This document shows, in pieces, positions 11,985 through 53,500 of a stretch of DNA of 64,000 nucleotides. A program made the translations under genes and the position numbers. The stretch is taken from the NCBI RefSeq assembly GCF_001194135.2, contig NC_069008.1, positions 16,204,565 to 16,268,564 on the forward strand. The letters run 5' to 3'. This DNA comes from Octopus bimaculoides (Eukaryota). The notes below the pieces were generated by a model that was not told the DNA's origin, did not search any database, and saw only the letters and a list, made by a program, of their open reading frames with translations. Positions within the stretch are counted from its first letter, which is position 1, and each line of letters begins with the position of its first letter.

Positions 11985-12146
11985 GACATTATTTACATTT
12001 GACAGATATTTGTCTTCATCTTGTTTGTTGTTAACACAACGTTTCGGCTGATATACCCTCCAGCCTTCGTCAGGTGTCTTGGGGAAATTTCGAACCTGGG
12101 TTCTCATTCCTAACGTTGTTACTATTATATTATTATTATTATTATN
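11985..12146 (-). mobile_element. Hammerhead-containing SINE (family H), 3' body; head lost in the gap
   Basis: (TAA)n linker followed by ttaggaatgagaacccaggttcgaaatttccccaagacacctgacgaagg...; same body as 27.7, 38.9 and 53.3 kb. Confidence 0.8.
12033..12078 (-). ncRNA. Minimal type-I hammerhead ribozyme motif
   Basis: GACAC-CUGACGA-A-GGCUG(GAGGGUAUAU)CAGCC-GAAA-CG-U-U-GUGUU: complete core, 5-bp stems I and II, palindromic AACGUU stem III. Confidence 0.7.
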
Positions 12147-12403
12147 NNNNNNNNNNNNNNNNNNNNNNNNNNNNNNNNNNNNNNNNNNNNNNNNNNNNNN
12201 NNNNNNNNNNNNNNNNNNNNNNNNNNNNNNNNNNNNNNNNNNNNNNNNNNNNNNNNNNNNNNNNNNNNNNNNNNNNNNNNNNNNNNNNNNNNNNNNNNNN
12301 NNNNNNNNNNNNNNNNNNNNNNNNNNNNNNNNNNNNNNNNNNNNNNNNNNNNNNNNNNNNNNNNNNNNNNNNNNNNNNNNNNNNNNNNNNNNNNNNNNNN
12401 NNN

Positions 12404-12745
12404 TTCCAGTTGATCCGATCAACGGAACAGCCTGCTCGTGAAATTAACGTGCAAGTGGCTGAGCACTCCACAGACACGTGTACCCTTAACGTAGTTCTCG
12501 GGGGATATTCAGCGTGACAAGGCTGGACCCCTTTGAATTACAGGCACAACAGAAACAGGAAGTAAGAGTGAGAGAAAGTTGTGGTGAAAGAGTACAGCAG
12601 GGTTCGCCACCATCCCCTGTCGGAGCCTCGTGGAGCTTTAGGTGTTTTCGCTCAATAAACACTCACAACGCTCGGTCTGGGAATCGAAACTGCGATCCTA
12701 TGACCGTGAGTCCGCTGCCCTAACCACTGGGCCATTGCGCCTCCA
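12404..12745 (-). mobile_element. tRNA(Arg)-like SINE, family A
   Basis: Reverse complement of the family A consensus, including A box tggcccagtgg and B box gtttcgattccc. Confidence 0.85.
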
Positions 12746-13723: not shown

Positions 13724-14458
<735 letters not shown>

Positions 14459-15900: not shown

Positions 15901-16796
15901 GGCATAATTTGAAACCATTACTATTAACATTGCTCAACTTGTATTCATCGTCACCAGTCTGTGAAGTATATTTTAAACACACAAGCTTGCACTCTCTCGT
16001 TGACTACCTTCAGACATCAAAGTCAATGGGAAATTAATTACAGGTATGAAATGCCGTGTTCTGGCATGACTTTCGGCAACCTTGTGGAACGTAAAGTTTT
16101 AGCGAATGTTGGCGGGGATAATTGGACGTAGAAATGTCCGAAAAGCGGTCACTCATCCTCTTTGTATAAACCGGACAAAACCTTCCGAATGGAAGGTGTT
16201 TCTGCATGTATTAACACATTAAGCGCGAAGGGCCACCATCGTGGCCGTCAAGCACAGGTCGACAGGCTACGATCGTGGCCCAGATAGATGCATTTAAGGG
16301 CGTTCGTTGGGGTCTAATGTCACTCAAACGCTCCAATACCCCGCCCCCAGAATGCGAGAAGACTAACAGTTCAACTAATGGCTTTTCAGATTATGTAAAA
16401 CTTACCACCATTATATACTAAGATATTTTAAACTATTCGTTGTTTTTTATGTGTGCACGGTAGTCTCATCTTCATAAAATGTGCTCAGCAGTCCATGCTG
16501 TGTAAATGCAAATCCCATCGCTTTATATGTTAAATCAGTGGTTCCCAAAGTGGGTGGTGTTGCCCATCTGGGGCGGTGGAAAGTTCCAAGGGGGCACTGA
16601 AGAAAAGTGGGATGATAATGGGGGGGGGGGGAGTGATTCATGTGAAAACAAAATAACAGAACTACGATGACTAAGATTAAAGTGAAGGCTTTACAGATTA
16701 CTGTGAAGCCCACAGGACTAACTCAGGGTCAATCAGGGAAAAAGACCTTAAAATGTTGGTTGTTAAGAGATGCAATGAATTTTGACAATGATATAG

Positions 16797-17050
16797 TTAC
16801 ACTTTTGTATGGATAGATATATATTTGGTTAAGAGAGAGAATGATTTACCACAGAAATCACAGGGATATGGTTTGTCCCTTGTATGAATACATTTGTGAT
16901 TCATGACATTATTATATGTGAATGATTTACCACAGACATCACAGTGAAATGGACTCTCTCTCGTATTAATATATTTGTATTTAGGCAACGTTTCTGAGTG
17001 AAAGACCTTTTAAATATGCTAATGGCAGTTTCCCTTTCAACATGTCTTCA
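16797..17050 (-). pseudogene. ZNF relic A (about 3 decayed terminal fingers)
   Basis: [50 protein letters not shown] with deletions, no leader or promoter; paralogous to relic B. Confidence 0.8.
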
Positions 17051-19410
17051 GTCGTCCCTTATTTTACTTTAACCAGCACATCTGTGGATACATTTCCTGT
17101 TTTTGTTCTACAGATCTAGTCTCTCTCATTCACAAAATGAACCCCTTTTAATTTTGCTCAGATTGCATTCAATCTGGGTGCATCGATGGAACTCTGAAGT
17201 TTGATTACGATCAACAAATTCCTTCATTTCATAAATTAAAGAATCTAGTGCTGTTTGGAATTAAAGTCGAGGAATTTGGCTAACTTTAGCCAATCAACAG
17301 ACAGCAAGGCATTAACAGCTTGTTACCATGACAACTACACATTATGTTGGTTCTTCACACCATGAGATTTACTTCACCCATGTTTTAATAAAAATTTATA
17401 ATTTATCAATTAGAATCTTATAGATATTTTTTATTCAATTCTCTTAATATTTTTCACATATAATGAGAGTTGTTTATGATGTTTATACAGTTTCTTGGCA
17501 TTGTGAAGGTGAATTAAACATGTGAACTTACTACAGATAATTTGACATTATTTTTGAATTCTGCAAAAAACCTAAGATACAGATATTCTTTTCCTTGGGA
17601 CAAATTCTTTGTTGACCAGTGTTATTCTTATTGTAGTTTACAAATCCAAGCATGGAAACTTTCCTCAACTTCGAAGTTTTGGAGACAGACGCCTCCTTTT
17701 CACACACACACATATATTAATGATGTACACAAATACATGACAGGTAATACATAAGGAAATATGCATAAAGTAAACACATGCAGACAAATATAATCAATAT
17801 AACAATAATTTTTGAAAAGTAATTAAGCCATACAATCAATGAAGAGACAAAAGAAACAGTAAGATGGTACATGTTGATTTTATTAGGTATTTCAGTTTAT
17901 TTACAAACCTACAATGAAGATTCATTTCACTGAGACTAAACCACAAATTTCAAGAGTACAACTATGAAGTTGACATTGCTCTGCTAAATGCAGAAAATTT
18001 CTGTCTCGCTACTGGATAAAAATACAGTTTTTATGATTTTTAAACCTCTAATTTTTTTCTTCACAACATTATACCTTCATAGCAATTAGACTGGGAAACT
18101 ATATTATTATAGCCAAGTTTCAGATTTTGTACTGTCTTTTAAAAAATGCATATTTTGCAAATGGAAAGAACTTAGATCCATTATTCCTCACAAACATTGC
18201 TTTATGCTATCTTTCCATCGACAGTAATCCTTCTTGATATCTGAGAAGATTCTGAAATTATCCAAGTTTAACTTCATTACAAAATCTTGTAGACATTCCA
18301 AATATTGCAGAAGAGAAATGTTGCTATCAATCTTAGCTGAGAAGAATATTTCACTGGAATTCTCTGGAGTTGGGCTTTCAATGCCTTCTTGCCTTCACCG
18401 TGAATAACACCTGACCTTTCTACCTTCACTTTCAGAAGACAAGCAAAAGAATTTTCAAAGACTGACTCAGAAAAGTAGAAAAAAAAAAATAATGTAAAAA
18501 ATTCCCAGCATAAAATCAGCATCATTTTCATGTATATCGCCAGTTTCTGAAGGAAGAGGGGAAATAAGCTGGCAAATTTCTTAGTGATATTTCATTTGTC
18601 CTTATGTTCTGCGTTCAGACTCTGCAGGGGTCAACTTTGCCTTTCATCCTCTCGTGGCCAATTATTGAATCACCAATTCAGATTTAGATGAAGATACCGA
18701 AGCCTTTCGATTTCAATTTCCAGTCATCTTCTGCTCTGAAATGTCTCCAGTCTCAACAAATTTGGACAAGATGTCACAGGAGAGCTTATTCCGTCAATTG
18801 AAGATATCCACAGTTATGGTTCATGGCATTTGCATTCTTCTTCATTCACCCAATTCTCTTATGACTGTGAATCACATGTTTATGACAAAATTTGATTTGT
18901 ACAGAGAAAATATCCAGATTCTCGTCTTTGGTAAAGATCCTAGGCTGATTTATTTTCACTAAACTCTCCACAAATTCAAGAAATGGTTTATCCACAACCT
19001 TATGCTTTTTCTTGGGAGTGTAAGGAACAACATTTCCCTATCTTCTTTCTTCTCACCTCCAAAACACAATCTTCAACTTGGTCCCTTCCTTCATTTCTTT
19101 CCATAACTTTATAAACATGGATGAAATGCTGATAGGAATTTTTACCAGACATGCTAGCAACTCTGCCAACTTGCCATCTTATTATTTACTCACAACATTA
19201 AATATAATGACAGTATCTTTCCTATATCCATGAAGTATGTTATATGGAATAGATATACAACAATCTGATACATGAAACAGGTATGGTTACTGTCAAGGGG
19301 TCAATGATTACTGTTAAGGGCACAAAAGTTAAGCCATGATTTAGCAGGGGGAATGGTTTTGAAATATTGGTTGTTGTTGGGTGTTCTAATGAACTTTTAC
19401 AATGATACAA

Positions 19411-21097
<1,687 letters not shown>

Positions 21098-23428
21098 TTC
21101 TCTAAGGGATACAAAGAAACCCAACCATTGAAGTTTCTCACAGTATTAAAATTTTCCCTTATCTTCTCTCACCACAGCATATAATTTCCTTTCTCTTCTT
21201 CTTCTTCTTGTTATAATTTATTCCTTAGAAATATTTCAAGTATTATCAACTGTGATTTTATTGATATCTAAAATTCTGCAAACCCCTTTGTAAATATATT
21301 CAAGTTCAGATCAGAGCAAATATTTCACAGTAATTCCAGTCTAGATTTATTGCAGTTGGGTTATTATATCTCTTCTCTAAAGCATTTTCTGTTAGTCTTT
21401 AGAACATGATAAATATTCCAGATGTATCCAATGTTAAAAAAGTTGTTTTGTGCCAAAGTCATCCATTAATCTGAAATAAAGAAACAATATTAGATATAGA
21501 GGAGAGATTAAAATGGAAATGTTGCAACATTTCTATACTGATTAACAAATGACATCATATAACATTGGGTGAAATCTAAAAATTTGTAAACTCCAACTAC
21601 ACCCTCACAGTGTGTAACATTTTATCTGTCAGGCACACTGTGGCCACCAACAGAATGTTATAGTCAAATCTTCTGAGTGTCTGACAATATATGCTTAGAT
21701 TGCAAATAAAAGTGTAAGGGGGGGGGGGCTAGCTGTTTGCATGATGATAGCATTTATTGTTTAATCTCCAATCATCATCAACCAAGGGGCAACAGTTTGG
21801 CGTGCAGCTGTCTTCAAGAATTTTGCGTTTCTCATTTTCACCGTCTCTTCGTTGCATGGTGTGTCGTTTTAGATTTCACTCTTTTACTTGTTTCAGTCTT
21901 TTGACTGTGGCCATGCTGGAGCACCGCCTTTAGTCGAGCAAATCGACCCCAGGACTTAGTCTTTNNNNNNNNNNNNNNNNNNNNNNNNNNNNNNNNNNNN
22001 NNNNNNNNNNNNNNNNNNNNNNNNNNNNNNNNNNNNNNNNNNNNNNNNNNNNNNNNNNNNNNNNNNNNNNNNNNNNNNNNNNNNNNNNNNNNNNNNNNNN
22101 NNNNNNNNNNNNNNNNNNNNNNNNNNNNNNNNNNNNNNNNNNNNNNNNNNNNNNNNNNNNNNNNNNNNNNNNNNNNNNNNNNNNNNNNNNNNNNNNNNNN
22201 NNNNNNNNNNNNNNNNNNNNNNNNNNNNNNNNNNNNNNNNNNNNNNNNNNNNNNNNNNNNNNNNNNNNNNNNNNNNNNNNNNNNNNNNNNNNNNNNNNNN
22301 NNNNNNNNNNNNNNNNNNNNNNNNNNNNNNNNNNNNNNNNNNNNNNNNNNNNNNNNNNNNNNNNNNNNNNNNNNNNNNNNNNNNNNNNNNNNNNNNNNNN
22401 NNNNNNNNNNNNNNNNNNNNNNNNNNNNNNNNNNNNNNNNNNNNNNNNNNNNNNNNNNNNNNNNNNNNNNNNNNNNNNNNNNNNNNNNNNNNNNNNNNNN
22501 NNNNNNNNNNNNNNNNNNNNNNNNNNNNNNNNNNNNNNNNNNNNNNNNNNNNNNNNNNNNNNNNNNNNNNNNNNNNNNNNNNNNNNNNNNNNNNNNNNNN
22601 NNNNNNNNNNNNNNNNNNNNNNNNNNNNNNNNNNNNNNNNNNNNNNNNNNNNNNNNNNNNNNNNNNNNNNNNNNNNNNNNNNNNNNNNNNNNNNNNNNNN
22701 NNNNNNNNNNNNNNNNNNNNNNNNNNNNNNNNNNNNNNNNNNNNNNNNNNNNNNNNNNNNNNNNNNNNNNNNNNNNNNNNNNNNNNNNNNNNNNNNNNNN
22801 NNNNNNNNNNNNNNNNNNNNNNNNNNNNNNNNNNNNNNNNNNNNNNNNNNNNNNNNNNNNNNNNNNAACCCTGTAGTTATGCCAAAAAGAGTACATACTT
22901 GTTGTAATTTGGTTATCTATAGTCCGATGATATTTCGGAATTACAATTCCTTCTTCAGATCTTCTTAGCTGGAGTCTCAATAATTTATAGAATTAAACAG
23001 AAGCGTGCTTTCCGGAATACGGTGCAGAAGCATTTCATGATGGGGTAAAACAATGTCCTAAATGAATGAGAGTTTACAAATCCAAAGAAAGTGTACGCAG
23101 CAGAATAAAACATCACTTACTGTTACGAAACAATGTGGAACATGATAAATGTTCAAATAATCCGTAGACAGTTATCAAGTTCTAGAATATTCTTCTATTA
23201 TATATTTTCTCCGTGGGATTGAGTTGAGACACAAATATAATACATATTATTCGCTTGACATCCTCGTCAACAAGAGACAGGAGGTAGCGTGTATCTATGC
23301 GCGATGCTGGCTGTTGATTGAACCAACCAAATCACGCAGAGCTGGATGCAGATATTGACAAAGGGAAAGTAGTCCTCCAACAGGTTGAACGAAATCTACT
23401 TTATTTATATGTAGTAATTATCATGTTA

Positions 23429-23779
23429 GTGGAGGCGCAATGGCCCAGTGGTTAGGGCAGCGGACTCGCGGTCGTAGGATCGATTCCCAGACCGGGCGTT
23501 GTGAGTGTTTATTGAGCAAAAACACCTAAAGCTCCACGAGGCTCCGGCAGAGGATGGTGGCGAACCCTGCTGTACTCTTTCACCACAACTTTCTCTCACT
23601 CTTTCTTCCTGTTTCTGTTGTGCCTGTAATTCAAAGGGTCAGCCTTGTCACACTGTGTCACGCTGAATATCCCCGAGAACTACGTTAAGGGTACACGTGT
23701 CTGTGGAGTGCTCAGCCACTTGCACGTTAATTTCACGAGCAGGCTGTTCCGTTGATCGGATCAACTGGAACCCTCGACG
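23429..23779 (+). mobile_element. tRNA(Arg)-like SINE, family A, with TGTTA target duplication
   Basis: Flanked by tgtta at 23424-23428 and 23780-23784; the paralogous empty site is at about 60938-60950. Confidence 0.88.
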
Positions 23780-24054
23780 TGTTAAGGTGAACGTTAGTGT
23801 TTGTGAATAAGATGGGGGAGACTTAAGTATTTCAGGGTCGGTGTAGCATCACATTCATGATTAACTATTTCATTTCATCATAACTTTACATCGTTAATTG
23901 GTTGTTCCCTATTTTGCAGGACAGGGGAAATGACTTTTAATTAACAACAAATCAATCAATAAACTTTCCACACCCTTCTCTACTTTTCAGCTGGAATTTA
24001 AATCGAAAGCACAACTTTTTACGTCGCTATTGTTGCATATATAGTAGCACGTTT

Positions 24055-26720: not shown

Positions 26721-27429
26721 CTATAGCGGCTGTTGTTGGCTGTTATTAAATGGAAAAAAAGGTTACTATGAATCATGCTAAAACAGTTTCGTGTATAAAT
26801 ATAATGTTTATTCTGTGCTCACCTTTTGTGGTGGAAGCATGTAGTTTGATACAAAAACATGTGTGCTTACATACAAAGAAAGTTTTGATTTTTGCTTTTG
26901 CACTGAAAGAAGTAACATATAATATTTGTATTACAGTATCTATGCATGTGTGTGATGAGAACAGTCATTTTGAGAATGTGTGTGTGATAACAAAATATCT
27001 TCATTTACAAAATATCTTATGTCAAGGTGAATAGACATGTAACATGTGTGAAGCTGCAGTGGAGACGTGTGTCTTTGACCAAGGCCTGGCAGTAACTGAG
27101 ATCGTTTCTGCAGTGTAGCTCAGAACGAGGCTACTGTATCAAAGCGAGGCTAGCTACATCGATATGTTTGTCTGCTGTGCAGGACGACTGTAGCGCCTCT
27201 GGTCACACGTTATTACACCTCAGTTATGTCGCTATGATACATAGCTTCCTGCTAGACTTGAAAAAGTCAAAAAGAGGTAACGAAATGGCGTATGCAAATA
27301 TGCAGTGCAGAATGCAGGTAAGAACATGGAATACAAGCAGAAGAATGCAATGCAACAAAGAATGAGAAACTAAAATGAGAAAGCAGAGTATGGTAAGGGT
27401 AAACAGAACATGAACACAAAGAGATAAGT

Positions 27430-27613
27430 AAAATGTTCAATACAGTTCTATATTTAAGAGATGAGGAATTATTTACATTATTTACATTATTTACATTTGA
27501 CGGATATTTCTCCTCATCTTGTTTGTTGTTAACACAACATTTCGGCTGATATACCCTCCAGCCTTCGTCAGGTGTCTTGGGGAAATATCGAACCTGGGTT
27601 CTCATTCCTAACA
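27430..27613 (-). mobile_element. Family H body (inverted copy) with hammerhead at 27531-27576
   Basis: Reverse complement of the family H body; CUGACGA core intact, stem III reads GAAAUGUU. Confidence 0.8.
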
Positions 27614-27614
27614 A

Positions 27615-27842
27615 TGGCGTAGTGGTTAAGAGCGCGGGCTACTAACCCCAAGGTTCCGAGTTCGATTCACGGCAGCGACCTGATTAATTATAATAATAAT
27701 AGTAACATCGTTAGGAATGAGAACCCAGGTTCGAAATTTCCCCAAGACACCTGACGAAGGCTGGAGGGTATATCAGCCGAAACGTTGTGTTAACAACAAA
27801 CATGATGAAGAGAAATATCCGTCAAATGTAAATAATGTAAAA
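27615..27842 (+). mobile_element. Family H SINE: tRNA-derived head, (TAA)n linker, hammerhead body
   Basis: A box TGGCGTAGTGG 27615-27625, B box GTTCGATTC 27660-27668, then ttaggaatgagaacccagg...gtcaaatgtaaataatgt. Confidence 0.85.
27746..27791 (+). ncRNA. Minimal type-I hammerhead ribozyme motif
   Basis: GACAC CTGACGA A GGCTG gagggtatat CAGCC GAAA CG T T GTGTT. Confidence 0.72.
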
Positions 27843-27989
27843 TGTTCAAGTCAATTAAAGTTCGAAGGAATACTGTGAAGAACAAAAATGCATCGTTGGT
27901 GATATGTGTTGAAGAGTGTTTGGTAAGTTCACAGGTAGTTTATTATAGTTCGGATGCATATAGTTTTAGACAGCTTGGTGGACCAAAGT

Positions 27990-28165
27990 TATTGTTGGCA
28001 CTCCGTCGCTTACGACGTCGAGGGTTCCAGTCGATCCGATCAATGGAACAGCCTGCTAGTGAAATTAACGTGCAAGTGGCTGAGCACTCCACAGACATGT
28101 GTACCCTTAACGTAGTTCTCGGGGATATTCAGCGTGACACAGTGTGACAAGGCTGACCCTTTGAA
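27990..28165 (-). mobile_element. SINE family A, 5'-truncated, abutting the gypsy integrase relic
   Basis: ttcaaagggtcagcc...gacggagtgccaacaa; junction microhomology ttcaaa. Confidence 0.8.
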
Positions 28166-29175
28166 ATCCGTCCAGTGAGAAAAACTTTGGCAACAGATTC
28201 TGCAGTGATGTCTACTAAAGGAATAGCTTCCAGCCAAAATGTGAAGTGATCAATGCAGATGAGAAGGTAGATTGGTCATGATCAATGTGTACATGGTTGA
28301 AATGCACATCTAGTGTTGAATGTGCCAAGGAGATGTTTGGGTCTGTGGTGAAAAAATGCATGGTTGACCGCTGGATGCTGCAGAGAATGTGCCATGCTCA
28401 ATTTTCTGGTTGGTCATTTTCCTGTTGAGAAAAAGTACAGGGTTGGGTACACTTATGTGCTGAAGCTCCAAACTTGGCATGATACCAGCATATAGATGAA
28501 TGAGTGGGGGACAAAGGATAGCAAGGTGAGAAAGATCAATCGAAAGAACGCCTTCTGAGTGAACGTGACCTGGAAGTGCAAAGAGCTGCACTCTCTCCCT
28601 TTAATTCAAGTATTGCCTTCAGGCTTGCAGCCAAGGCAAGGTCCTTATCAGTGGAAACCGATGCTACTGATGGCTGTGCAGATGTATACAGTGGTCAGCT
28701 TGGTGGGACTGCTGGAAGTCTCTATGATTCTGTTGGCGATGGAGGCTATTTGTTTGACGGGAGTTGTCTCCACTATAGAGGCTAGGATGGCTTGAATGTT
28801 AGAGGGCAACCAGGAAAAGACAAAGAATTTCAATAAAGCACTATTGGCAGGTGCATTTTGGGCCCATTCCTTCATGCGGTGTAGAAGTTGCAAGGGATTA
28901 CGGTCGCCCAAGTGCTCATCATTTATGAGGGTTTGAAATTTTCTTTCTTCCGACAAGAACGTGCGTCGAACAATCTCATGCTTAATGCTCCTATGCATGG
29001 CATCATGTGATGGTTTGGTTACCAGGTCCCTCACAGTGGCTATATCAGACGGTGGTATTGCGCCAAATAATACATGGAGCCGTTGGTCTTCGGAGGCAAT
29101 ATTGTTTGCGGCAAACGTCGATTCAGTCTGTGCGATATACACTTTCACATCACCCATGAAACAAGGTAAGGAACT
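28166..29175 (-). mobile_element. Internally deleted Ty3/gypsy LTR retrotransposon: gag (DUF7041-like) plus integrase fragment
   Basis: Gag LPCF...AQTESTF...IPPSDIATVRDLV...EHLGDRNPLQLLHRM...LPSNIQAILAS and knuckle ICWYHAKFGASAHKCTQPC; integrase LGTF-TLDVHFNHVHID...YLLICIDHFTFWLEAIPLVDITAESVAKVF. Protease, RT and RNase H are absent. Confidence 0.85.
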
Positions 29176-29205
29176 GTGTTCTAATGAATTTTGACAATGA
29201 TACAA

Positions 29206-29901
29206 TCACACTTTTACATGGAGAGATGTATGTGTATTTAAGTTACTTCTCTGAGAGAATGATTTACCACAGAAGTCACAGGAATATGGTTTCTCTCCTG
29301 TATGAATACGTTTGTGTTTAGTTAAGCTAGAGTTTTCAGAGAATGACTTACCACAGATATCACAATTATATGGCTTTTCTCCCGTATGAGTACGTTTGTG
29401 TTTCATCAAGTCACTACTTGCAGAGAATGATTTACTACAGACATCACAGTGAAATGGTCTCTCTCCTGTATGAATAAGTTTGTGTGTAGTTAAGTTACCT
29501 TTTGTTGAGAATGATTTACCACAGATAACACATTGAAATGGCTTTTCTGCTGCATGAATACGTTTGTGTGTAGTTAAGCCGCTGTTTGCAGAGAATGATT
29601 TACCACAGATCACACAGTGATATGGTTTCTCTCCTGTGTGAATACGTTTGTGATTGCTTAACTGGCTATTCTCAGTGAATGCTTTGCCACAGATATCACA
29701 GTGATATGGTTTCTCTCCTGTATGAATACGTATATGTTTACTTAAGCTACCATTTTGAGAGAATGATTTACCACAGGCATCACAGTGAAATGGCTTCTCA
29801 CCTGTATGAACACGAATGTGTTTAACCAAGTTACTACATGTAGAGAATGATTTACCACATATTTTACAATGATATCCTATGTTCACTAATTCTTTTGACA
29901 T
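29206..29901 (-). CDS. G4: C2H2 zinc-finger protein, 8 fingers, 231 aa
   Basis: Intact ORF MSKELVNIG...HTSLHVKV; acceptor 30231/30232; exon 1 at 33442-33574. Confidence 0.93.
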   Translation of the reverse strand: MSKELVNIGYHCKICGKSFSTCSNLVKHIRVHTGEKPFHCDACGKSFSQNGSLSKHIRIHTGEKPYHCDICGKAFTENSQLSNHKRIHTGEKPYHCVICGKSFSANSGLTTHKRIHAAEKPFQCVICGKSFSTKGNLTTHKLIHTGERPFHCDVCSKSFSASSDLMKHKRTHTGEKPYNCDICGKSFSENSSLTKHKRIHTGEKPYSCDFCGKSFSQRSNLNTHTSLHVKV

Positions 29902-32489
29902 TTCTCTAAGGGATACAAATAGACACAACCATTGAAGTTTCTCACAGTAATAAATTTTCCCCTTATCTTTCTTCTCTCACCACAGCATATAATTTCCTTT
30001 TTCTTGTTATAATTTATTCCTTAGAAATATATCTGCTGCTATCAACTGATTTTACCAATATCTAAAATTCTGCAAAAGCACCAGGTAATGAGATGAAGAA
30101 ATGTTGGTATTTATCTCAAGTCAGAGCAAATCTGCTCTCTAAAACATTTTCCTTTGGTCTTTAAAACATGATTAATATGTCAGATGTATCCAGTGTACAA
30201 AAGTTGTTTTATGCCAACGTCATCCATTAATCTGTAACAAAAAAGAAACAGTATTAGATATACAGGAGATATCAAACTGGAAGTGCTGCAATATTTCAAA
30301 TGACATCACATAATATTGGGTGAAATCTAAAAATTTGCAAATTACAATTACACCTCCACATTGTGTGTGTATATATAGCAGTTGAATAAATTTAAAACAT
30401 ATTCTGGTTTTCACATTTTTTATTATGGTATTTTAGCAAAATTAGCGCTTTCATGCATAGTATACTCATGAGATTTCTAATGTGTTTAACTGACAGTTGA
30501 GTTCTTGACAACTTTAGTACCTCTTAGAACGCACCAACCAGCTGAATTTTTCAAATACCTTTTGATCAATCCGCAATAAAAACAACACCACAATCACAAC
30601 TGATATTTATTACAGACACACAGACACACCAGTATCCAGATTTAAAATCATGTCACCTAACACACACAAAATGCAACATCCCATACTGTCTAACCAGGAA
30701 AATTTGTACTATAGTTTAATGATGCAAATACCAGAAACACATGATTTATAGAACTCAAAGGGTCTCTGCTCAAGCAAAATTACCCTCTCCTACTTATAGA
30801 AAATACTATACAACAGCCGACAGCATGAAAATAGGTCATACAAATTGTTATTAATATTGGAAAAAATTCTAAGTTTCCAACATTTTTATGATAGAGAGTT
30901 AAGAGAAGTTATATTGTGTAAGAGAGTGAATTCAATATGTATTTCAGTTCCAAATGTTATGAAGCACGCGTTATGGTTAAATTACTTTATACAGTTATAA
31001 TATTTAGACAATGGTTTCTTCAAAATGTTAGGATTAAGAGAAAAACCAAGAATGAATAGTGAGAGAGGGGTTTGGAGGAGTAAAGTTGAAAAAAGTGTGA
31101 CACACTGACAATTGCTTTCGCATTTATTATTATAGATATGAATGTTTTGAAAATCATTAGCAAAATCTAAAACGACATACCACGTAACGAAGAGAGGGCA
31201 AAAATGAGACAGAAAAAATTCTCAAAGACAGCTGCATGCCAAACTATTGCTCATTGCTTGATGATGATGATTAAAATTTAACCAACAAAACACGATCACC
31301 ATGCAAACGGCAACGGCCCTCTTACACTTTCATTCGCAAACTAGGCATATAGTCAGACATGCAGTAGGCTTGACTATAACATTCTGTTGTTGGTCACTGC
31401 ATGCCTGACTATATATATGTATATATATATATATATATNNNNNNNNNNNNNNNNNNNNNNNNNNNNNNNNNNNNNNNNNNNNNNNNNNNNNNNNNNNNNN
31501 NNNNNNNNNNNNNNNNNNNNNNNNNNNNNNNNNNNNNNNNNNNNNNNNNNNNNNNNNNNNNNNNNNNNNNNNNNNNNNNNNNNNNNNNNNNNNNNNNNNN
31601 NNNNNNNNNNNNNNNNNNNNNNNNNNNNNNNNNNNNNNNNNNNNNNNNNNNNNNNNNNNNNNNNNNNNNNNNNNNNNNNNNNNNNNNNNNNNNNNNNNNN
31701 NNNNNNNNNNNNNNNNNNNNNNNNNNNNNNNNNNNNNNNNNNNNNNNNNNNNNNNNNNNNNNNNNNNNNNNNNNNNNNNNNNNNNNNNNNNNNNNNNNNN
31801 NNNNNNNNNNNNNNNNNNNNNNNNNNNNNNNNNNNNNNNNNNNNNNNNNNNNNNNNNNNNNNNNNNNNNNNNNNNNNNNNNNNNNNNNNNNNNNNNNNNN
31901 NNNNNNNNNNNNNNNNNNNNNNNNNNNNNNNNNNNNNNNNNNNNNNNNNNNNNNNNNNNNNNNNNNNNNNNNNNNNNNNNNNNNNNNNNNNNNNNNNNAT
32001 GATTATCATGATATATAGATGAAATCATATACATATATCTATCCATTTACCCCTCTCTCTCTTTTCGAAAAATGTTTTTTTTTTTTTCTAATCCCTTTCC
32101 CATCTTCCTCTCTGGACCGATTCTGATTAATTTTGTGGCCACTACACGATTAAAAACTAGAGGAGAAGCCTTTTTAGAAAAAAAAAAAAAAAATTCTGGC
32201 GAAAGCGCGTGTGATTTAATGGAAGTTTGGTCGTTGTTTCTAGCACATCCCATGACCGGTAAGGTGTAGTAGGGTTCATAAAATCAAAAATTTTCAAAAC
32301 AATTTCTTAATAGCATAATTGAATTTCTGCTATTAACGGGGAGAAAATACTGAAAACCATCAACCAATACTTGTCAAGAGTGACAAAGAAACGAGGAAGG
32401 TGGCAGTTGGATATGCTAGAAGCAACAGTCAAATCGCCCTTTAACCACACCCCTTTACGTACGAAAACATTTACTGTTTTTACCGAAAA

Positions 32490-33999: not shown

Positions 34000-35621
34000 G
34001 TAAGATATACACACCTATCTATCGATTTATCGTACTTACCGGACCTTTTGTCCGACTTACAGAAATCCACGAGAGTATTCGGTTTTCCCCACCCGTCTCT
34101 GAAGGTGACCGGGTTTCCCGCTTTACACTTTGTGGGTCCTGAGGGACTGTGGCCTTCCGTGCCGCCTCCCCCTCTCTTTAGCTTCTCTGGTCATATCTAA
34201 TTCAGATTGCTTTACTCCAGAGCACACAACACTACGCTACAGTGAGCCATGTTGAGCAGAATGTTCCTAAGTAGACTAAGTTTCACCAAAGAACAAGTGG
34301 AATGACACTCTAAAGACAACACAAGTAATTTCCTATTTTATGTCCGTATAATAAATTCACAATTTAAATTGCACCAATATGTATGTATATATATATATGT
34401 ATATATATAAACATATACATACACATACAGATTTATATATACATATATATNNNNNNNNNNNNNNNNNNNNNNNNNNNNNNNNNNNNNNNNNNNNNNNNNN
34501 NNNNNNNNNNNNNNNNNNNNNNNNNNNNNNNNNNNNNNNNNNNNNNNNNNNNNNNNNNNNNNNNNNNNNNNNNNNNNNNNNNNNNNNNNNNNNNNNNNNN
34601 NNNNNNNNNNNNNNNNNNNNNNNNNNNNNNNNNNNNNNNNNNNNNNNNNNNNNNNNNNNNNNNNNNNNNNNNNNNNNNNNNNNNNNNNNNNNNNNNNNNN
34701 NNNNNNNNNNNNNNNNNNNNNNNNNNNNNNNNNNNNNNNNNNNNNNNNNNNNNNNNNNNNNNNNNNNNNNNNNNNNNNNNNNNNNNNNNNNNNNNNNNNN
34801 NNNNNNNNNNNNNNNNNNNNNNNNNNNNNNNNNNNNNNNNNNNNNNNNNNNNNNNNNNNNNNNNNNNNNNNNNNNNNNNNNNNNNNNNNNNNNNNNNNNN
34901 NNNNNNNNNNNNNNNNNNNNNNNNNNNNNNNNNNNNNNNNNNNNNNNNNNNNNNNNNNNNNNNNNNNNNNNNNNNNNNNNNNNNNNNNNNNNNNNNNNNN
35001 NNNNNNNNNNNNNNNNNNNNNNNNNNNNNNNNNNNNNNNNNNNNNNNNNNNNNNNNNNNNNNNNNNNNNNNNNNNNNNNNNNNNNNNNNNNNNNNNNNNN
35101 NNNNNNNNNNNNNNNNNNNNNNNNNNNNNNNNNNNNNNNNNNNNNNNNNNNNNNNNNNNNNNNNNCTATATCTAATACTGTTTCTTTATTATTTCAGATT
35201 AATGGATGACATTGGCACAAAACAACTTTTTTAAGTTTGGATACATCTGGAATATTGATAATTTTTTTAAAGACTAGAGGAAAATATAGAGAACAGATAT
35301 AATAACCCAACTGCAATAAATCTAGACTGGAATTACTGTGAAATATTTGCTCTGAGCGAAGATTCATAGCACCATTTCTGCATCTCATTATCTGCTGCTT
35401 TTGCATTCTAATTAAACTTGAATATCTTTGCAAAGGAGTTTGCAGAATTTTAGATATTGATAAAGTCACAGTTGATAGCAGTTGAAATATTTCTGGGGAA
35501 TAAATTATAACAATAACAAGAAGAAGGAAATTATATGCTGTGGTGAGAGACGAAGGATAAGGGAAAAATTTAATATTGTGAAAAACTTCAATGGTTGGAT
35601 GCATTTGTATCCCTTAGAGAA

Positions 35622-36401
35622 ATGTCAAAAATATTAGGAAAATCACAACATTGTTGTGAAATTTGTGGTAAATCATTCCCCGCAAGTAGTGACTTGGTTA
35701 AACACATTCGTTTTCATACAGGTGAGAAGCCATTTCACTGTGATACCTGTGGTAAATCCTTCTCTCAAAACTGTAGCTTAAGTAAACATATACGTATTCA
35801 TACAGGAGAAAAGCCATTTCACTGTGACACCTGTGGTAGATCATTCTCTCAAAAGGGTGACTTAACTAAACACATACGTATTCACACAGGAGAGAGACCA
35901 TATCATTGTGATGTCTGTGGCAAATCATTCTCTGCACACAGTACCTTAGTTATACACAAAAATATTCATTCAGCGGAAAAGCCATATAATTGTGATATCT
36001 GTGGTAAGTCATTCTCTCTCAGGAACAGCTTAATTAGTCACATACGTATTCATACAGGAGAGAAACCATATCACTGTGATATCTGCGGGAAGGCATTCAC
36101 TGAGGATAGTCACTTAAGGAGACACAGACGTATTCACACGGGAGAGAGACCGTATCACTGTGATTTCTGTGGTAAATCATTCTCTGGAATTACTGACTTG
36201 ACTACACACAAACGTATTCATACAAAGGAGAGACCATATACTTGTGATATCTGTGATAAATCATTCTCTGACAACTCGAACTTAACTCGACACAAACGTA
36301 TTCATACAGGGGAGAGACCATATCCCTGTGACATCTGTGGTAAAACATTCTCTCGGAGAGGTAACTTAACTACACATGCATCTGTCCATGTAAAAGTGTG
36401 A
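35622..36401 (+). CDS. G5: C2H2 zinc-finger protein, 9 fingers, 259 aa
   Basis: Intact [12 protein letters not shown]...HASVHVKV. Confidence 0.93.
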
Positions 36402-37428: not shown

Positions 37429-37562
37429 CGAGTGAGTGACACTTACACATACATGCAAAAAAGTTGTTACTTCACAATACACACCTTCACTCGCTCTCTC
37501 TCAGACACACACACACCTCCGTTTCATATACATCTACGTCTTTCACATTCTTCTCGCTTTTA

Positions 37563-37798
37563 CAGTGTGACAAGGCTGACCCCCTTTGAATTACAGGTAC
37601 AACAGAAACAGGAAGGAAGAGCGAGAGAAAGTTGTGGTGAAAGAGTACAGCAGGGTTCGCCACCATCCCCTGCCGGAGCCTCGTGGAGCTTTAGGCGTTT
37701 TTTCTCAATAAACACTCACAATGCCCGGTCTGGGAATTGAAACTGCGATCCTATGACCGTGAGTCCACTGCACTAGCCACTGGGCCATTGCGACTCCA
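37563..37798 (-). mobile_element. tRNA(Arg)-like SINE, family A, 3'-truncated
   Basis: Reverse complement of the family A head and body. Confidence 0.8.
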
Positions 37799-38779
37799 CA
37801 AGTATAAAAAAACAACGAAAAAGTGAAGGTATGTATAAATAGTTGAACTAAATCTAATTATATGTAATAACTATTTTGTGTTAAGGTGAACGCAAAGGTA
37901 TGTAAATAAGACAGGATAACCTATGTATTTCAGGGTCGGCGTTCCATTACCTTCGTGATGAAATATTTGATCACAGCATTACAACGTTAATTAGTTTGTC
38001 CCCTATTTTACAGGATAGAGTTAAATGGCTTTTAATCAACAACAAATCAATCAATGCACTTTCCTCACCCTTCTGGGATTCTTTCATCTGGACTTAGAAA
38101 GCAAATTATTTGCGCCGCTATTGTTGCATGTATATTGTAGCAGGCTTCCATTAACTGAATTCAAATGAGGACTCGGTCACCGAGAAGTATTCTAATGGTA
38201 AATACAAAATGTATTGGTGTATGATATCTAAAGCAAGAAGCTGAACCATAATTACATACCATCTTATAGAGGCTGCCATTGGCTGTTCAAGTGCGTATTA
38301 TTAAATGGAAAAACAGTATGAATCACCACAAGACATTTTTGTGTATAAATATGTTTATTCTGTTTTCACCTTTTGTGGTGGAAGCATGCAGTGCGATACA
38401 AAAGCGTGTTTACATAAAAAGAAAGTTTTTGTACTGAAAGAAGTAACATATAATATTTGTATTACAGTATGTAACAACCATTCTGAGGATGTGTGATGAA
38501 ATATCTTTGTTTACAAACCATATATCTTGTGTCGAGGTATACAGACATGTGAGTCACACATGGAAGATTTCGCATGGAGCTGCAGACGACCGAAGCCTGG
38601 CAGGAACTGAGAGTTGCTACAGTATAGTTCAGAACGAGGCTAGATGCCTCATCAACATATTCCTCTGCTGTGCTGGTAGACTCACATATCACTATGTAAT
38701 ATGTCGCCGTTCTACAGTTTCAAATGTTTGTCAGCTATAACATAGGACACTTCTAACATGACTATTCTTAATATAGATT

Positions 38780-39055
38780 TACAACTACAGTTCTATATTT
38801 CAGAGATGACGAATTATGTACATTATTTACAGTTGACGGATATTTGCCCTCATCTTGTTTGTTGCTAACATGTTTTGACTGATATACCCTCCAGCCTTCA
38901 TAAGGTGTCTTGGGAAATTTTTGAACCTGTGTTCTCATTCCTAATGTATTTTTCGAAGTTATCATTTTTATTATTATTATCACTCGGGTCAATGTTTGGA
39001 ATTGAACTCAGAATGTTGTGGTTAGTAGTCCACACTCTCAACTACTACGCCATAT
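38780..39055 (-). mobile_element. Family H SINE (head, linker, body) with an inactivated hammerhead core
   Basis: atggcgtagtagttgagagtg...gagttcaattcc head; core reads CUUAUGA...AAAA instead of CUGAUGA...GAAA. Confidence 0.8.
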
Positions 39056-41310: not shown

Positions 41311-41824
41311 TTCTCTAATGGATAAACATATATCCAACCATTGAAATATTTAGAAATATTTCTACTGCTATTAAGTTATGGATATCCAAAATTGTGCAAA
41401 CTGCTTTGTAAATATATTCAAGTTTAATTAGAATGCAAAAGCACCATGTGATAAGAGGGAGAAATGTTGCTATGAATCTCAGCTTAGGGAAAATATTTCA
41501 CAGTAATTCAACCCTAGATTAATAGCAGTTTATATCTGTTCTTTAAAACATTTTCCTTTGGTCTTGAAAAAGATGGTAAATATTCCAGATGTATCCAAAC
41601 TTAAAAAAGTTGTTTCATGCCAAAGTCATCCGTTAATCTGAAATAATAAAGAAACAGTATTAGATATAGAGGAGAGATCAAAACGGAAATGTTTCAATAT
41701 TTCTTTATTGATTAACAAATGATATCACATAACATTGGGTGAAATCTAACGATTTGTAAACCACAACTACACCTCCAACTTGTGTTTGTGTGTCCGTATC
41801 AACGTTCAGAAGAGCAGAGAAGAA

Positions 41825-51245: not shown

Positions 51246-53244
51246 TAAATATCTGGCTGTGATAAACGAATCTTTATTATTGTCACCAGCGGCCTTGGTG
51301 GTGATGTTCTAAAAGATATATTTTATACTTTGTGATTAATATTGCTTAAGGCGGCGAGCGGTCCAGATGGATAATATGTAAACGGAACCCCCCCCCTTAA
51401 TTTTATTATTATCNNNNNNNNNNNNNNNNNNNNNNNNNNNNNNNNNNNNNNNNNNNNNNNNNNNNNNNNNNNNNNNNNNNNNNNNNNNNNNNNNNNNNNN
51501 NNNNNNNNNNNNNNNNNNNNNNNNNNNNNNNNNNNNNNNNNNNNNNNNNNNNNNNNNNNNNNNNNNNNNNNNNNNNNNNNNNNNNNNNNNNNNNNNNNNN
51601 NNNNNNNNNNNNNNNNNNNNNNNNNNNNNNNNNNNNNNNNNNNNNNNNNNNNNNNNNNNNNNNNNNNNNNNNNNNNNNNNNNNNNNNNNNNNNNNNNNNN
51701 NNNNNNNNNNNNNNNNNNNNNNNNNTATTATTATCTTTTTTTTTGTTTTTACGGAATCCCACGTTTTAGGCTATGGAGATTCCGATTCTGAAAAAAATAA
51801 TTGTGTGTAAAATTTCAATTTCCCCACCCCCAAGCAGGCTACTGACATGCTAGAAATAACAGCCAAATCTCACAAAACTGCGATAACATAAAGCAAGAAA
51901 TGTGTAATCAATCTGCTCACCTTTCTGTAGAGATTTCTTTCAGAGTAATTTCTCGCAGTAATATGAAATTAGAGCGTTTTTTTTTGTTTTTTTTTTAATT
52001 TCAGAAATATAACAGTTTTGTAGAGAAGTGTCTTTGGGGAATCCGTGCTGGTGGAGTTGAGGGGAGGGGGATAAACTTCCGTAATGTGTTCGAGAAATGT
52101 ATAGAAATTCTCGAAGTTTTTGAATATACGCCACCGATGCCGTTCAAGCAAACAACAAATTATCAACGAAACTGACCATTAGGTGTGTTTGGTAGTTAGA
52201 AAAGGAAATAAAATTATGAGGGAATTAACATAAATAAGTCAACTTACTGTTAAACGACTTACACCTTCGCTATAGCAACCAAAAAGTGAACAAATGTATA
52301 AATAGTTAAAACTATCTTGTGTTAAGGTGAACGTTAATGTTTGTGAATAAGACAGGGCAACCTACGTATTCCAGGGTCGGCGAACCATTACTTTTGGGAT
52401 TAAATATTTGATTGTAGTATTAAGTCGCTAATTGGTTGTCCCCTATTTTACGAGACAGTGGTAAATGGCTTTTAATCAACAAATCAATCAATGCACTTTC
52501 CTCTCCCTTCCGGAATTTTTTCATCTGGACTTTAAATAGAGAGCACAAATTAGTTTCATCGCTATTGTTGCATGCTTCCACCAATTGAGTTCAGGAGAAG
52601 ACCCGGTCGCCAAAAAGAAAAAAAAAATTCTAATGATAAGTAGAAAATGTATTGGTCTATAGATAGCAAATGTTCCACTTGTATGAAGAGAGGTGTATGA
52701 TATCGAAGACAAGAAGCTGAACCATAATTACATACCGTTTTGTAGCAGCTTTCGTTGGCTGTTTAAATGCGTGGTATTAAATAGAAAAACAATAAGACAT
52801 TTTTGTGTATAAATATATTGTTTATTGTGATCACCTTTTGTGGTGGAAGCATGTAGTTTGATACAAAAAAGTGCTTATATACAAAGAAAGTTTTGATTTT
52901 TGCTTTTGCACTGAAATGAGTAACATATAATATTTGTATTACAGTATGCATGTTTATGCGTAAGGAGAACGGCCATTTTGAGAATGATATATCTTGTGTT
53001 GAGGTGAACAGACACGTGAGTCACATGTGGGAGATTGCGCGTGCAGGAAATGAGTTTCTACAGTTTAACTCAAAAGGCTAGATGCCTCATCAATATATTC
53101 ATCTGCTGTGCTGGTAGACTCATCTATTACGATGTAATATGTAGCTCTTCCACAATTTCAAACGTTTCTCAGCTTACAAGCAATTCCTGGAGATATAACA
53201 TAGGAAACTTGTAACACAACTATTTTTAATATAGATTTACAAGT

Positions 53245-53500
53245 ACAGTTCTATATTTGAGACATGAGGAATTATATACACTATTTATATTTGACGGATA
53301 TTTGTCTATAACTTGTTTATTGTTAACACAACGTTTCGGCTGATATACTCTCCAGCCTTCATCAGGTGTCTTGGGGGAATTTTCGAACCTGGGTTCTCGT
53401 TCCCATGGTATTTTTCAATGTTGTTGTTATTATTATTCAGGTCACTGCCTAGAATTCAAATCAGAATCTTTGGTTTAGTAGTGGGCTACTAAACCAAAGA
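53245..53500 (-). mobile_element. Family H SINE with an intact hammerhead (53325-53370) and a rearranged 5' end
   Basis: GACAC-CUGAUGA-A-GGCUG(GAGAGUAUAU)CAGCC-GAAA-CG-U-U-GUGUU; head truncated into foldback hairpins. Confidence 0.8.

What the first reader, a model, noticed from the sequence alone, without database searches (positions are those of the whole stretch)
27615..27842. tRNA-headed SINE carrying a hammerhead ribozyme: candidate Penelope-dependent SINE
Seen: a tRNA-like head with A and B boxes, a (TAA)n linker and a roughly 150-nt body recur at 27.6 (+), 38.8-39.05 (-) and 53.2-53.5 kb (-), with body-only copies at 12.0 and 27.5 kb. The body folds as a type-I hammerhead: stem I GACAC/GUGUU, core CUGA(C/U)GA, one extra A, stem II GGCUG/CAGCC, GAAA, minimal stem III within the palindrome AACGUU, cleavage after GUU. 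Among the core-intact copies, variation falls at the free N7 position, in loop II and once in stem III. Established: Penelope pseudo-LTRs encode minimal type-I hammerheads with palindromic stem III that act as dimers, and an extra A after A9 occurs in the CChMVd viroid hammerhead. Inference: a Pol III SINE captured a Penelope terminus and ribozyme, possibly to define its 3' end, making it a SINE/retrozyme hybrid. SINEs normally borrow LINE tails; I do not know of this combination being described, but could not check.
Basis: partly seen in the sequence, partly recalled or inferred. Interest (0 to 1): 0.85.

Follow-up and report, generated by a model that had tools for sequence, protein, structure and literature searches.

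The report
Octopus SINE with Penelope-type hammerhead
A short tRNA-headed mobile element in the Octopus bimaculoides genome carries the minimal hammerhead-ribozyme motif typical of Penelope-like retrotransposons and is inserted in the way Penelope elements are, so it is probably a SINE that parasitises Penelope elements; this is a variant of things already known (schistosome Sm-alpha SINEs, animal retrozymes).

Summary
Five copies of one element lie in the window, from three independent insertions. Each has a tRNA-like head with A and B boxes, a (TAA)n-like linker and a 127-nt body. Some copies carry a further 34-43-nt tail.

Four copies hold an intact minimal type-I hammerhead. My strict descriptor found three of them, against 0 hits in 300 shuffles. 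The motif also has every extra trait described for Penelope-like-element (PLE) hammerheads: one extra nucleotide after A9, a G10.1-C11.1 pair, a palindromic 15.2/16.2 pair with no loop III, and a short helix I with a long helix II.

New here: the 27.5/27.6 kb pair is a single 396-bp insertion flanked by a 13-bp target duplication. An inverted 5'-truncated copy abuts the full copy, and only one end carries the tail. That is the published PLE insertion signature.

PLE dependence is therefore well supported, but no autonomous partner could be looked for.
- The cleavage site lies 50-93 nt inside the element, so it does not define the 3' end.
- No tandem copies occur, so this is not a retrozyme.
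- tRNA-derived SINEs with hammerheads are already known (Sm-alpha, Sj-alpha).

Verdict: a new variant of a known kind, of moderate interest.

The parts
27428..27440 (.). Left copy of the target-site duplication, GTAAAATGTTCAA
   Evidence: Perfect 13-nt direct repeat with 27837-27849, exactly at the outer borders of homology to the other copies. It is a direct repeat, so it cannot derive from the inverted arms.
27441..27483 (-). 3' tail extension of the inverted copy (...AAATAATGT AAATAATTCCTCATCTCTTAAATATAGAACTGTA). It includes one extra 9-nt TAAATAATG unit.
   Evidence: Shared with the 38.8 and 53.3 kb copies. Absent from the 27.6(+) and 12.0 kb copies. The 9-nt tandem is at 27468-27497.
27484..27612 (-). 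Inverted, 5'-truncated copy (body only). It starts at the linker/body border and holds a hammerhead at 27531-27576 with C15.2 changed to U.
   Evidence: Inverted repeat 27481-27616 / 27706-27841: 136 nt, 96% complementary. Found by the relaxed descriptor.
27613..27683 (+). tRNA-like head: box A TGGCGTAGTGG at 27615-27625, box B GAGTTCGATTC at 27658-27668
   Evidence: The strict A+B pattern occurs once in the window against 0 in 300 shuffles. Rfam tRNA match 14.3 bits at 27615-27672.
27684..27709 (+). AT-rich (TAA)n-like linker, variable between the old and young subfamilies
   Evidence: Alignment A1
27710..27836 (+). Body (3' module) of the full-length copy, short 3' end ...AAATGTAAATAAT
   Evidence: No run of T4 or longer on the sense strand.
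27746..27791 (+). Minimal type-I hammerhead: helix I 27746-50 / 27787-91; core CUGACGA 27751-57; extra A 27758; helix II 27759-64 / 27773-78; GAAA 27779-82; C15.2-G16.2 27783-84; U16.1 27785; U17 27786. Predicted cleavage after 27786.
   Evidence: Descriptor hit, 0 in 300 shuffles. Helices I and II form in the local minimum-energy fold.
27837..27849 (.). Right copy of the target-site duplication
   Evidence: family D2. The first GT is ambiguous with the element's end, so the TSD is 11-13 bp.
11986..12145 (-). Young copy: linker + body, short 3' end, intact hammerhead at 12033-12078. Its 5' side runs into an assembly gap.
   Evidence: 96% identical to the 27.x copies.
38786..39055 (-). Old copy: head + linker + body + 34-nt tail. 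Hammerhead core decayed (G5 to U, helix II and III hits), CpG-depleted head.
53244..53482 (-). Paralogue of the 38.8 kb copy: partial head + linker + body + tail, intact hammerhead at 53325-53370 (U7). The 5' part of the head is replaced at a palindromic breakpoint.

Best explanation
This is a family of tRNA-derived SINEs of Octopus bimaculoides. Its 3' module (127 nt, plus an optional 34-43-nt tail) is of Penelope-like-element (PLE) type and includes a PLE-style minimal hammerhead.

Inferred life cycle: RNA polymerase III starts from the A and B boxes of the head and reads through the linker and the 3' module, which contains no T4 terminator. A PLE reverse transcriptase / GIY-YIG endonuclease, supplied in trans, recognises the 3' module and copies it at a staggered target cut. 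Priming can occur from both nicks. That would give the head-to-head composite seen at 27441-27836, with both 3' ends facing outwards, a tail on one side only, and an 11-13-bp target duplication.

The hammerhead most likely came along as part of the borrowed PLE terminal module, much as ordinary SINEs borrow LINE tails. It may serve in recognition or folding. As a monomer it cannot form helix III, so any cleavage would need two RNAs pairing through the palindrome AACGUU.

Shown: the anatomy, the motif, the insertion architecture and the TSD. Inferred: Pol III transcription, the PLE partner, and any ribozyme activity.
For: Motif:
- The min-HHR descriptor gives 3 hits, all in this family, against 0 in 300 shuffles.

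Insertion architecture:
- A single 396-bp insertion with a 13-nt direct repeat at its outer borders encloses an inverted 5'-truncated copy next to the 5' end of the full copy. The tail is on one end only.
- This is what Craig et al. 2021 describe for PLE insertions, and they say it is not seen with LINE-type priming.
- Both arms carry the same 130 nt, which argues against twin priming.
- 3' ends come in two forms, short and long, in independent insertions.

One unit: head, linker and body occur in the same order in two independent insertions and inside one TSD.

Promoter: A and B boxes at tRNA spacing, 0 in 300 shuffles. No T4 run on the sense strand of any copy.

Context:
- Octopus genomes hold active Penelope families and hundreds of unclassified SINE families.
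- An O. vulgaris locus has an ORF with weak RT and GIY-YIG matches 180 bp from another min-HHR-like motif.
- Non-autonomous PLE derivatives that share their partner's 3' end are known in Chlamydomonas.
Against: - No autonomous PLE sharing the body or tail was found. None could be searched for, because no octopus genome is searchable by DNA here. The window itself yielded no PLE ORF among the ten longest non-zinc-finger ORFs scanned.
- There are only three independent insertions, and only one has both ends visible.
- The copies show no covariation: 0 compensatory pairs. The hammerhead is no better conserved than the rest of the body between the old and young subfamilies.
- Rfam hammerhead models do not match.
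- The tRNA model score is weak.
- Lack of a T4 run is expected in 21-25% of random stretches of this length.
- No tandem (pseudo-LTR) arrangement was seen.
- No further copies occur in 43 kb of other octopus DNA.
Confidence: 0.58

Rival explanations
1. An ordinary LINE-dependent tRNA SINE (for example with an RTE, CR1 or Dong partner). The hammerhead-like stretch would be an inert coincidence or an old relic, and the inverted composite a rare double-priming accident.
For: LINEs are the most abundant autonomous retroelements in octopus, at 12.9% of the O. vulgaris genome. No PLE partner was identified. There is no covariation and no Rfam hammerhead hit. Only one composite insertion was seen.
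Against: The motif occurred in 0 of 300 shuffles, and it carries four PLE-specific traits that the descriptor does not require. 3' ends are variable, and the one-sided tail is described as absent from LINE-type priming. Both arms duplicate the same 130 nt, unlike twin priming. None of about six copies of the other SINE family in the window forms such a composite.
Confidence: 0.15
2. Two elements rather than one. A simple tRNA-head-(TAA)n SINE received, in its microsatellite tail, a separate PLE-derived hammerhead element (a solo pseudo-LTR or retrozyme-like unit). The body would then be the real mobile unit, and the head only an occasional passenger.
For: PLEs show an insertion bias for microsatellites. 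The inverted arm starts almost exactly at the linker/body border. The linker differs between subfamilies while the body does not. Dispersed solitary min-HHRs are common in animal genomes.
Against: The 13-bp TSD encloses head and body together. Head, linker and body occur with the same order and orientation in two independent insertions of different age. The two young copies share the junction AGTAACAYCGTTAGG. This scenario fits better as the origin of the family than as its present state.
Confidence: 0.17
3. An active self-cleaving element of the retrozyme kind: transcripts are cut by the hammerhead, circularised, and copied as circles.
For: The hammerhead core is intact in four copies. Retrozymes and PLEs coexist in invertebrates.
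Against: No tandem copies occur in the window, so no unit-length RNA can be excised. The hammerhead is minimal and lacks helix III, and such motifs cleave poorly even as dimers in vitro. In the composite the two hammerheads lie on opposite strands. No element end coincides with the cleavage site.
Confidence: 0.05
4. The 27441-27836 block is a foldback or MITE-type DNA transposon with 136-bp terminal inverted repeats.
For: Inverted arms 96% complementary, with a flanking direct repeat.
Against: The arms are asymmetric: a tail on the left only, and the head only beside the right arm. The other copies are single-armed and carry the head. An 11-13-bp TSD is not typical of TIR transposons (this last point rests on general knowledge).
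Confidence: 0.03

Closest known systems
Minimal hammerheads of Penelope-like elements (Cervera and De la Pena 2014, PMC4209133; Lunse et al. 2017, cited in PMC6765202)
   Same: Type-I topology. No loop III, with a palindromic 15.2/16.2 pair. An extra nucleotide between A9 and G10.1. A G10.1-C11.1 pair. Helix I of 5 bp and helix II of 6 bp. Pairs of motifs on opposite strands a few hundred bp apart, and dispersed solitary copies.
   Different: Here the motif sits in a roughly 225-260-nt non-coding element headed by a tRNA-like Pol III promoter, not in the pseudo-LTR of an element with an RT/GIY-YIG ORF.
Sm-alpha / Sj-alpha SINE-like retroposons of schistosomes (Ferbeyre 1998 and Laha 2000, as described in PMC2770079, PMC6765202, PMC8490949)
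   Same: tRNA-derived (tRNA-Gln-like), Pol III-type, short, non-coding, high-copy elements that carry a type-I hammerhead.
   Different: Sm-alpha has a canonical hammerhead that cleaves multimeric transcripts and often occurs in tandem arrays. The octopus element has a PLE-type minimal hammerhead, is dispersed, and shows PLE-type insertion architecture. It is also in a different phylum.
Animal non-LTR retrozymes (Cervera and de la Pena 2020, PMC7229834; Li et al. 2026 preprint, 10.64898/2026.07.22.740005)
   Same: Short non-autonomous elements with type-I hammerheads, proposed to be mobilised by PLEs.
   Different: Retrozymes are tandem repeats of 170-400 bp with canonical hammerheads, expressed as circular RNAs, and no tRNA head has been reported for them. 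Here there are no tandems, the hammerhead is minimal, and a tRNA head is present.
Non-autonomous PLE derivatives such as MRC1 of Chlamydomonas (Craig et al. 2021, PMC8557442)
   Same: Non-coding elements thought to depend on PLE machinery, with PLE-type complex insertions.
   Different: Those lack a Pol III head, form pseudo-LTRs, and mostly lack hammerheads.
Octopus CORE-SINEs OR1/OR2 (Ohshima and Okada 1994, as cited in PMC4758252 and PMC4824008)
   Same: tRNA-derived SINEs of octopus.
   Different: The only hint is a 10-nt match of the tail (TTCCTCATCT) to the CORE domain as I remember it, which is not a test.

Membership tests
PLE-type minimal hammerhead (min-HHR) | Catalytic boxes CUGANGA and GAAA, U16.1, H17, and helices I and II in type-I order | tested here: met
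   Descriptor hits at 27746-27791, 12033-12078 and 53325-53370; 0 in 300 shuffles
PLE-type minimal hammerhead (min-HHR) | [quoted passage not shown] | tested here: met
   A at 27758 in all copies; criterion
PLE-type minimal hammerhead (min-HHR) | G10.1-C11.1 pair; palindromic 15.2-16.2 with no or a palindromic loop III | tested here: met
   G27759-C27778; C27783-G27784 within the palindrome AACGUU
PLE-type minimal hammerhead (min-HHR) | Located in the pseudo-LTR of an element with an RT/GIY-YIG ORF | not testable with these tools
   No DNA search of octopus genomes is available. No PLE ORF among the ten window ORFs scanned.
PLE-type minimal hammerhead (min-HHR) | Self-cleavage as a dimer | not testable with these tools
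   Needs an experiment. Folding only shows that helices I and II form.
Rfam Hammerhead_1 / HH9 / HH10 and related models | Match to the covariance model at the gathering score | tested here: not met
   No hammerhead hit at the gathering score or at E <= 10 on 27400-27900. This is expected if those models require a helix III hairpin (my assumption; I did not inspect the models).
tRNA-derived SINE | Internal Pol III promoter (box A, box B) in a tRNA-like 5' head | tested here: met
   Boxes at 27615-27625 and 27658-27668; strict pattern found in 0 of 300 shuffles. The tRNA model match is weak, 14.3 bits.
tRNA-derived SINE | Short, non-coding, dispersed copies flanked by target-site duplications | tested here: met
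   Three independent insertions; a 13-bp TSD around 27441-27836. TSDs of the other copies could not be determined.
tRNA-derived SINE | Transcribed by RNA polymerase III | not testable with these tools
   Only compatible evidence: no T4 run on the sense strand, which is true of 21-25% of random stretches.
tRNA-derived SINE | 3' end shared with an autonomous partner | not testable with these tools
   No partner found in about 105 kb of octopus DNA. No genome-wide search was possible.
PLE-mobilised (non-autonomous PLE) element | Inverted 5'-truncated copy directly upstream of the full copy | tested here: met
   27441-27612(-) abuts 27613-27836(+) inside one TSD; criterion
PLE-mobilised (non-autonomous PLE) element | [quoted passage not shown] | tested here: met
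   A 34-nt tail (43 nt with one extra 9-nt unit) at the left end only. The same tail is on the 38.8 and 53.3 kb copies and is absent from the 12.0 kb and 27.6(+) copies.
PLE-mobilised (non-autonomous PLE) element | Partial tandems forming pseudo-LTRs | tested here: not met
   No tandem copies in the window
Animal non-LTR retrozyme | Tandem repeats of 170-400 bp, each with a canonical type-I hammerhead; circular RNA | tested here: not met
   No tandems; minimal hammerhead without helix III or loop-loop contacts. Circular RNA is not testable here.
Sm-alpha / Sj-alpha | Sequence homology to the schistosome elements | not tested
   No Sm-alpha sequence was at hand. The resemblance is architectural only.

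The most novel reading that the evidence does not exclude
This would be a clear case of a true Pol III, tRNA-headed SINE whose retrotransposition partner is a Penelope-like element rather than a LINE. The minimal hammerhead would then be part of the module the PLE enzyme recognises.

If so, PLEs have SINE parasites just as LINEs do. Part of the thousands of 'orphan' dispersed minimal hammerheads in animal genomes, and part of the hundreds of unclassified octopus SINE families, would be PLE-dependent SINEs.
Probability: 0.3. Interest if true: 0.65.

Novelty: new variant of a known kind. Interest (0 to 1): 0.5.

Why it matters
SINEs are defined by their dependence on LINEs. PLEs form a separate retrotransposon order whose transposition cycle and hammerhead function remain unclear.

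A SINE that carries a PLE terminal module would do three things:
- It would give a compact, high-copy reporter for what the PLE enzyme recognises, and for whether the hammerhead is needed.
- It would explain why most minimal hammerheads in animal genomes are solitary and far from any PLE ORF.
- It would help classify the very large unclassified SINE fraction of octopus genomes.

The idea that hammerhead-bearing short elements depend on PLEs is already in print for retrozymes, and tRNA-derived hammerhead SINEs are known from schistosomes. The advance would therefore be incremental, not a new category.

Tried and rejected
Searches for more copies that found nothing:
- I translated the open frame of the body and searched the protein database, hoping to find spurious ORFs from other copies. 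No hits.
- The two other protein searches gave only one O. vulgaris and one O. bimaculoides protein. Their loci, L001 and L002 (43 kb), hold no copy.
- Exact-pattern scans for the helix II / core stretch in metagenome, prokaryote-genome and viral collections gave 0 hits.
- Looking up the right-edge zinc-finger ORF to extend the window failed.

Tests that were negative or uninformative:
- Rfam hammerhead models: no match.
- Covariation: none, because the stems do not vary among intact copies.
- Pfam scan of ten non-zinc-finger ORFs of the window: only DUF7041, no RT or GIY-YIG domain.
- Ferbeyre 1998 and Lunse 2017 are not held in the paper library. The supplement of Cervera 2014 is not held either.

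Ideas considered and rejected:
- That the sequence shared beyond ...CTGTA by the 38.8 and 53.3 kb copies belongs to the element. It is flank of a segmental duplication.
- That the 13-nt repeat derives from the arms. It is direct, not inverted.
- L1-type twin priming. Both arms carry the same 130 nt.

Full report
Origin of the window. A zinc-finger ORF of the window (5898-7094) maps exactly to Octopus bimaculoides assembly GCA_001194135.2, chromosome CM046628.1. This puts the window at about 16,204,565-16,268,564. It is a tandem cluster of C2H2 zinc-finger genes with 8.5 kb of assembly gaps.

The observation. blastn and nhmmer find the element five times and nowhere else in the window: 11986-12145 (-), 27441-27612 (-), 27613-27836 (+), 38786-39055 (-) and 53244-53482 (-) (sequences; alignment).

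A full copy has four parts:
- a 70-nt head with box A (TGGCGTAGTGG) and box B (GAGTTCGATTC) 43 nt apart;
- an AT-rich (TAA)n-like linker;
- a 127-nt body ending ...CCGTCAAATGTAAATAAT(GT);
- in some copies, a further 34-nt tail, ACATAATTCNTCATCTCTNAAATATAGAACTGTA.

The strict A+B box pattern occurs once in the window and in none of 300 dinucleotide-preserving shuffles. Rfam's tRNA model matches the head only weakly (14.3 bits), and ARAGORN calls nothing. The head is therefore tRNA-derived in the way SINE heads are, not a tRNA gene.

The hammerhead. The body reads GACAC-CUGACGA-A-GGCUGG(AGGGUAUA)UCAGCC-GAAA-CG-U-U|GUGUU. I wrote a descriptor for the minimal hammerhead of Cervera and De la Pena. 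It requires the core boxes, 0-1 extra nucleotide, a G10.1-C11.1 helix II of at least 4 bp, a Watson-Crick 15.2-16.2 pair with no loop or a palindromic one, U16.1, H17, and a helix I of at least 4 bp.

It hits three times in the window, always in this element, and never in 300 shuffles. A relaxed version adds the 27.5 kb arm, where C15.2 has become U by a CpG transition. The relaxed version gives 0.005 hits per shuffled window.

The motif shows all four features that those authors list as emerging independently of their descriptor:
- a G10.1-C11.1 pair;
- a palindromic 15.2-16.2 pair;
- a short helix I (5 bp) with a long helix II (6 bp).

Rfam's hammerhead models do not see it, even at E <= 10. 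This is expected if those models require a helix III hairpin, which I assume but did not check. Helices I and II form in the local minimum-energy fold.

Among the five copies there is no compensatory change. This says nothing either way, because the stems do not vary in the intact copies. The old subfamily (38.8 and 53.3 kb) has U at the free position N7 and the young one has C. The rest of the body is almost as well conserved between subfamilies as the core. I therefore cannot show selection on the ribozyme itself.

How many events. The 38.8 and 53.3 kb copies lie inside a 1.2-kb segmental duplication (37844-39029 against 52287-53482, 72% identity), so they represent one old insertion. The 12.0 kb copy is young, 96% identical to the 27.x copies, and its linker runs into an assembly gap.

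The 27.5 and 27.6 kb copies are two arms of a single insertion. A perfect 13-nt direct repeat, GTAAAATGTTCAA, sits at 27428-27440 and 27837-27849, exactly where homology to the other copies ends on each side. Because it is direct, it cannot come from the inverted arms.

Inside this duplication, the left part is an inverted copy truncated at the linker/body border, and it carries the tail. The right part is the full copy, and it ends in the short form without the tail. Both 3' ends face outwards, and the same 130 nt are present twice.

What this architecture means. Craig et al. [quoted passage not shown] They state that these features are not observed in LINE-type target-primed reverse transcription. 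The 27441-27836 insertion matches this description point by point.

The occurrence of short and long 3' ends in independent insertions fits as well. Twin priming by a LINE enzyme would not duplicate the 3' module in both arms. None of the roughly six copies of the other SINE family in the window forms such a composite.

Together with the PLE-type hammerhead, this makes mobilisation by a PLE enzyme the best explanation. Octopus genomes do hold active Penelope families (30 families with recent insertions in O. vulgaris) and 893 unclassified SINE families.

By chance, the O. vulgaris locus L001 contains an ORF at 19267-20697 with weak RVT_1 and weak GIY-YIG matches, both below Pfam's own cut-offs. 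Another min-HHR-like motif lies on the opposite strand 180 bp upstream, and the block is bounded by (TA)n on both sides. So octopus PLEs probably carry such motifs, but that one is not similar in sequence to the SINE body.

What the ribozyme does. The predicted cleavage site (after 27786) is 50 nt from the short 3' end and 84-93 nt from the long one. None of the visible element ends coincides with it, so the ribozyme does not define the 3' end of the inserted copy. Cleavage of a monomeric Pol III transcript would cut the promoter-bearing head from the tail.

There are no tandem copies, and in the composite the two motifs are on opposite strands, so a retrozyme-like excision and circle cycle is not supported. 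PLE pseudo-LTRs correspond to the 3' portion of the PLE unit and hold the hammerhead. A SINE that borrowed a PLE 3' end would therefore inherit the motif. I consider this the most likely reason for its presence. A role in enzyme recognition or folding is possible but unshown. In vitro, PLE minimal hammerheads cleave weakly and only as dimers.

What is known already. Sm-alpha and Sj-alpha of schistosomes are tRNA-Gln-derived, apparently Pol III-transcribed, SINE-like elements with a type-I hammerhead. Animal retrozymes have been proposed to depend on PLEs and have been called a new kind of SINE (and the 2026 preprint). Non-autonomous PLE derivatives exist in Chlamydomonas. Cervera and De la Pena noted thousands of solitary minimal hammerheads and pairs on opposite strands, and ascribed them to truncated PLEs.

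I found no paper that describes a tRNA-headed SINE with a PLE-type minimal hammerhead and PLE-type insertions, in cephalopods or elsewhere. However, Repbase, Dfam and SINEBase could not be consulted. I therefore class it as a new variant of a known kind.

Limits. All attempts to obtain more copies, or a partner element, failed for lack of a DNA search of eukaryotic genomes. Pol III transcription, the PLE partner and ribozyme activity all remain inferences.

Noticed in passing
window 5898-7094, 13724-14446, 19691-21124, 29206-29928, 35595-36401, 39312-41337, 47584-48963, 55149-56366, 61930-62991: Tandem cluster of single-exon C2H2 zinc-finger ORFs, 75-88% identical to each other at the DNA level. 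The window maps to O. bimaculoides chromosome CM046628.1.
   Followed up: partly
window 37844-39029 and 52287-53482; palindromes at 53455-53512 and 53507-53550: A 1.2-kb segmental duplication carries the old SINE copy. Its breakpoint at 53482 lies at the centre of a 27-nt near-perfect palindrome made from part of the SINE head. A second, perfect 20-nt palindrome follows directly. This suggests a fold-back type of rearrangement.
   Followed up: partly
window 7586-7861, 12404-12747, 23429-23786, 27994-28165, 37562-37809, 44177-44544: A second, unrelated SINE family. It has a tRNA-like head (TGGCCCAGTGGTTAGGG... at 23441) and a body containing GTGCAAGTGGCTGAGCACTCCACAGACA, which looks Deu-domain-like from memory. 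It twice lies within 300 bp of the hammerhead SINE, and is never in an inverted composite.
   Followed up: no
window 22926-22961 (-): A solitary min-HHR-like motif, GAU-CUGAAGA-A-GGAAU(UGUA)AUUCC-GAAA-UA-U-C|AUC, also with the extra A but with a helix I of only 3 bp. It is not part of any repeat in the window and lies next to an assembly gap. The relaxed descriptor gives 0.005 hits per shuffled window.
   Followed up: partly
L001 (O. vulgaris OX597841.1) 18890-20770: ORF 19267-20697 has weak RVT_1 and GIY-YIG matches, both below Pfam's cut-offs, and looks like a 5'-truncated Penelope-like element. A min-HHR-like motif (CUGACGA-GAGG..CCUC-GAAA-CCGG-UC) lies on the opposite strand at 19045-19086. 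The block is bounded by (TA)n microsatellites on both sides. A LINE-type RT ORF lies at 15975-17729.
   Followed up: partly
window 28648-29205 (-): A 185-aa ORF with a DUF7041 domain starts in frame directly after the stop codon of the zinc-finger ORF 29206-29928. Its only database relative is an O. bimaculoides protein at 60% identity.
   Followed up: partly
window 12146-12400: The assembly gap begins exactly in the (TAA)n linker of the 12.0 kb copy. Complex inverted PLE-type insertions are reported to break short-read assemblies, so the gap may hide a second composite.
   Followed up: no
3' flanks at window 11977-11985, 27428-27440, 38777-38785, 53235-53243: The DNA just beyond the 3' ends of the copies begins CTTGTA, TTGAAC, GTTGTA and CTTGTA. 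This may be a target-site preference, but it rests on only three independent events.
   Followed up: no
window 27452-27468, 38797-38813, 53255-53271 (-): The tail contains TTCCTCATCTNTNAAAT, which resembles the 3' part of the CORE-SINE domain as I remember it. Octopus OR1/OR2 are CORE-SINEs. In the window the motif occurs only in these three copies. The resemblance is from memory and is untested.
   Followed up: partly
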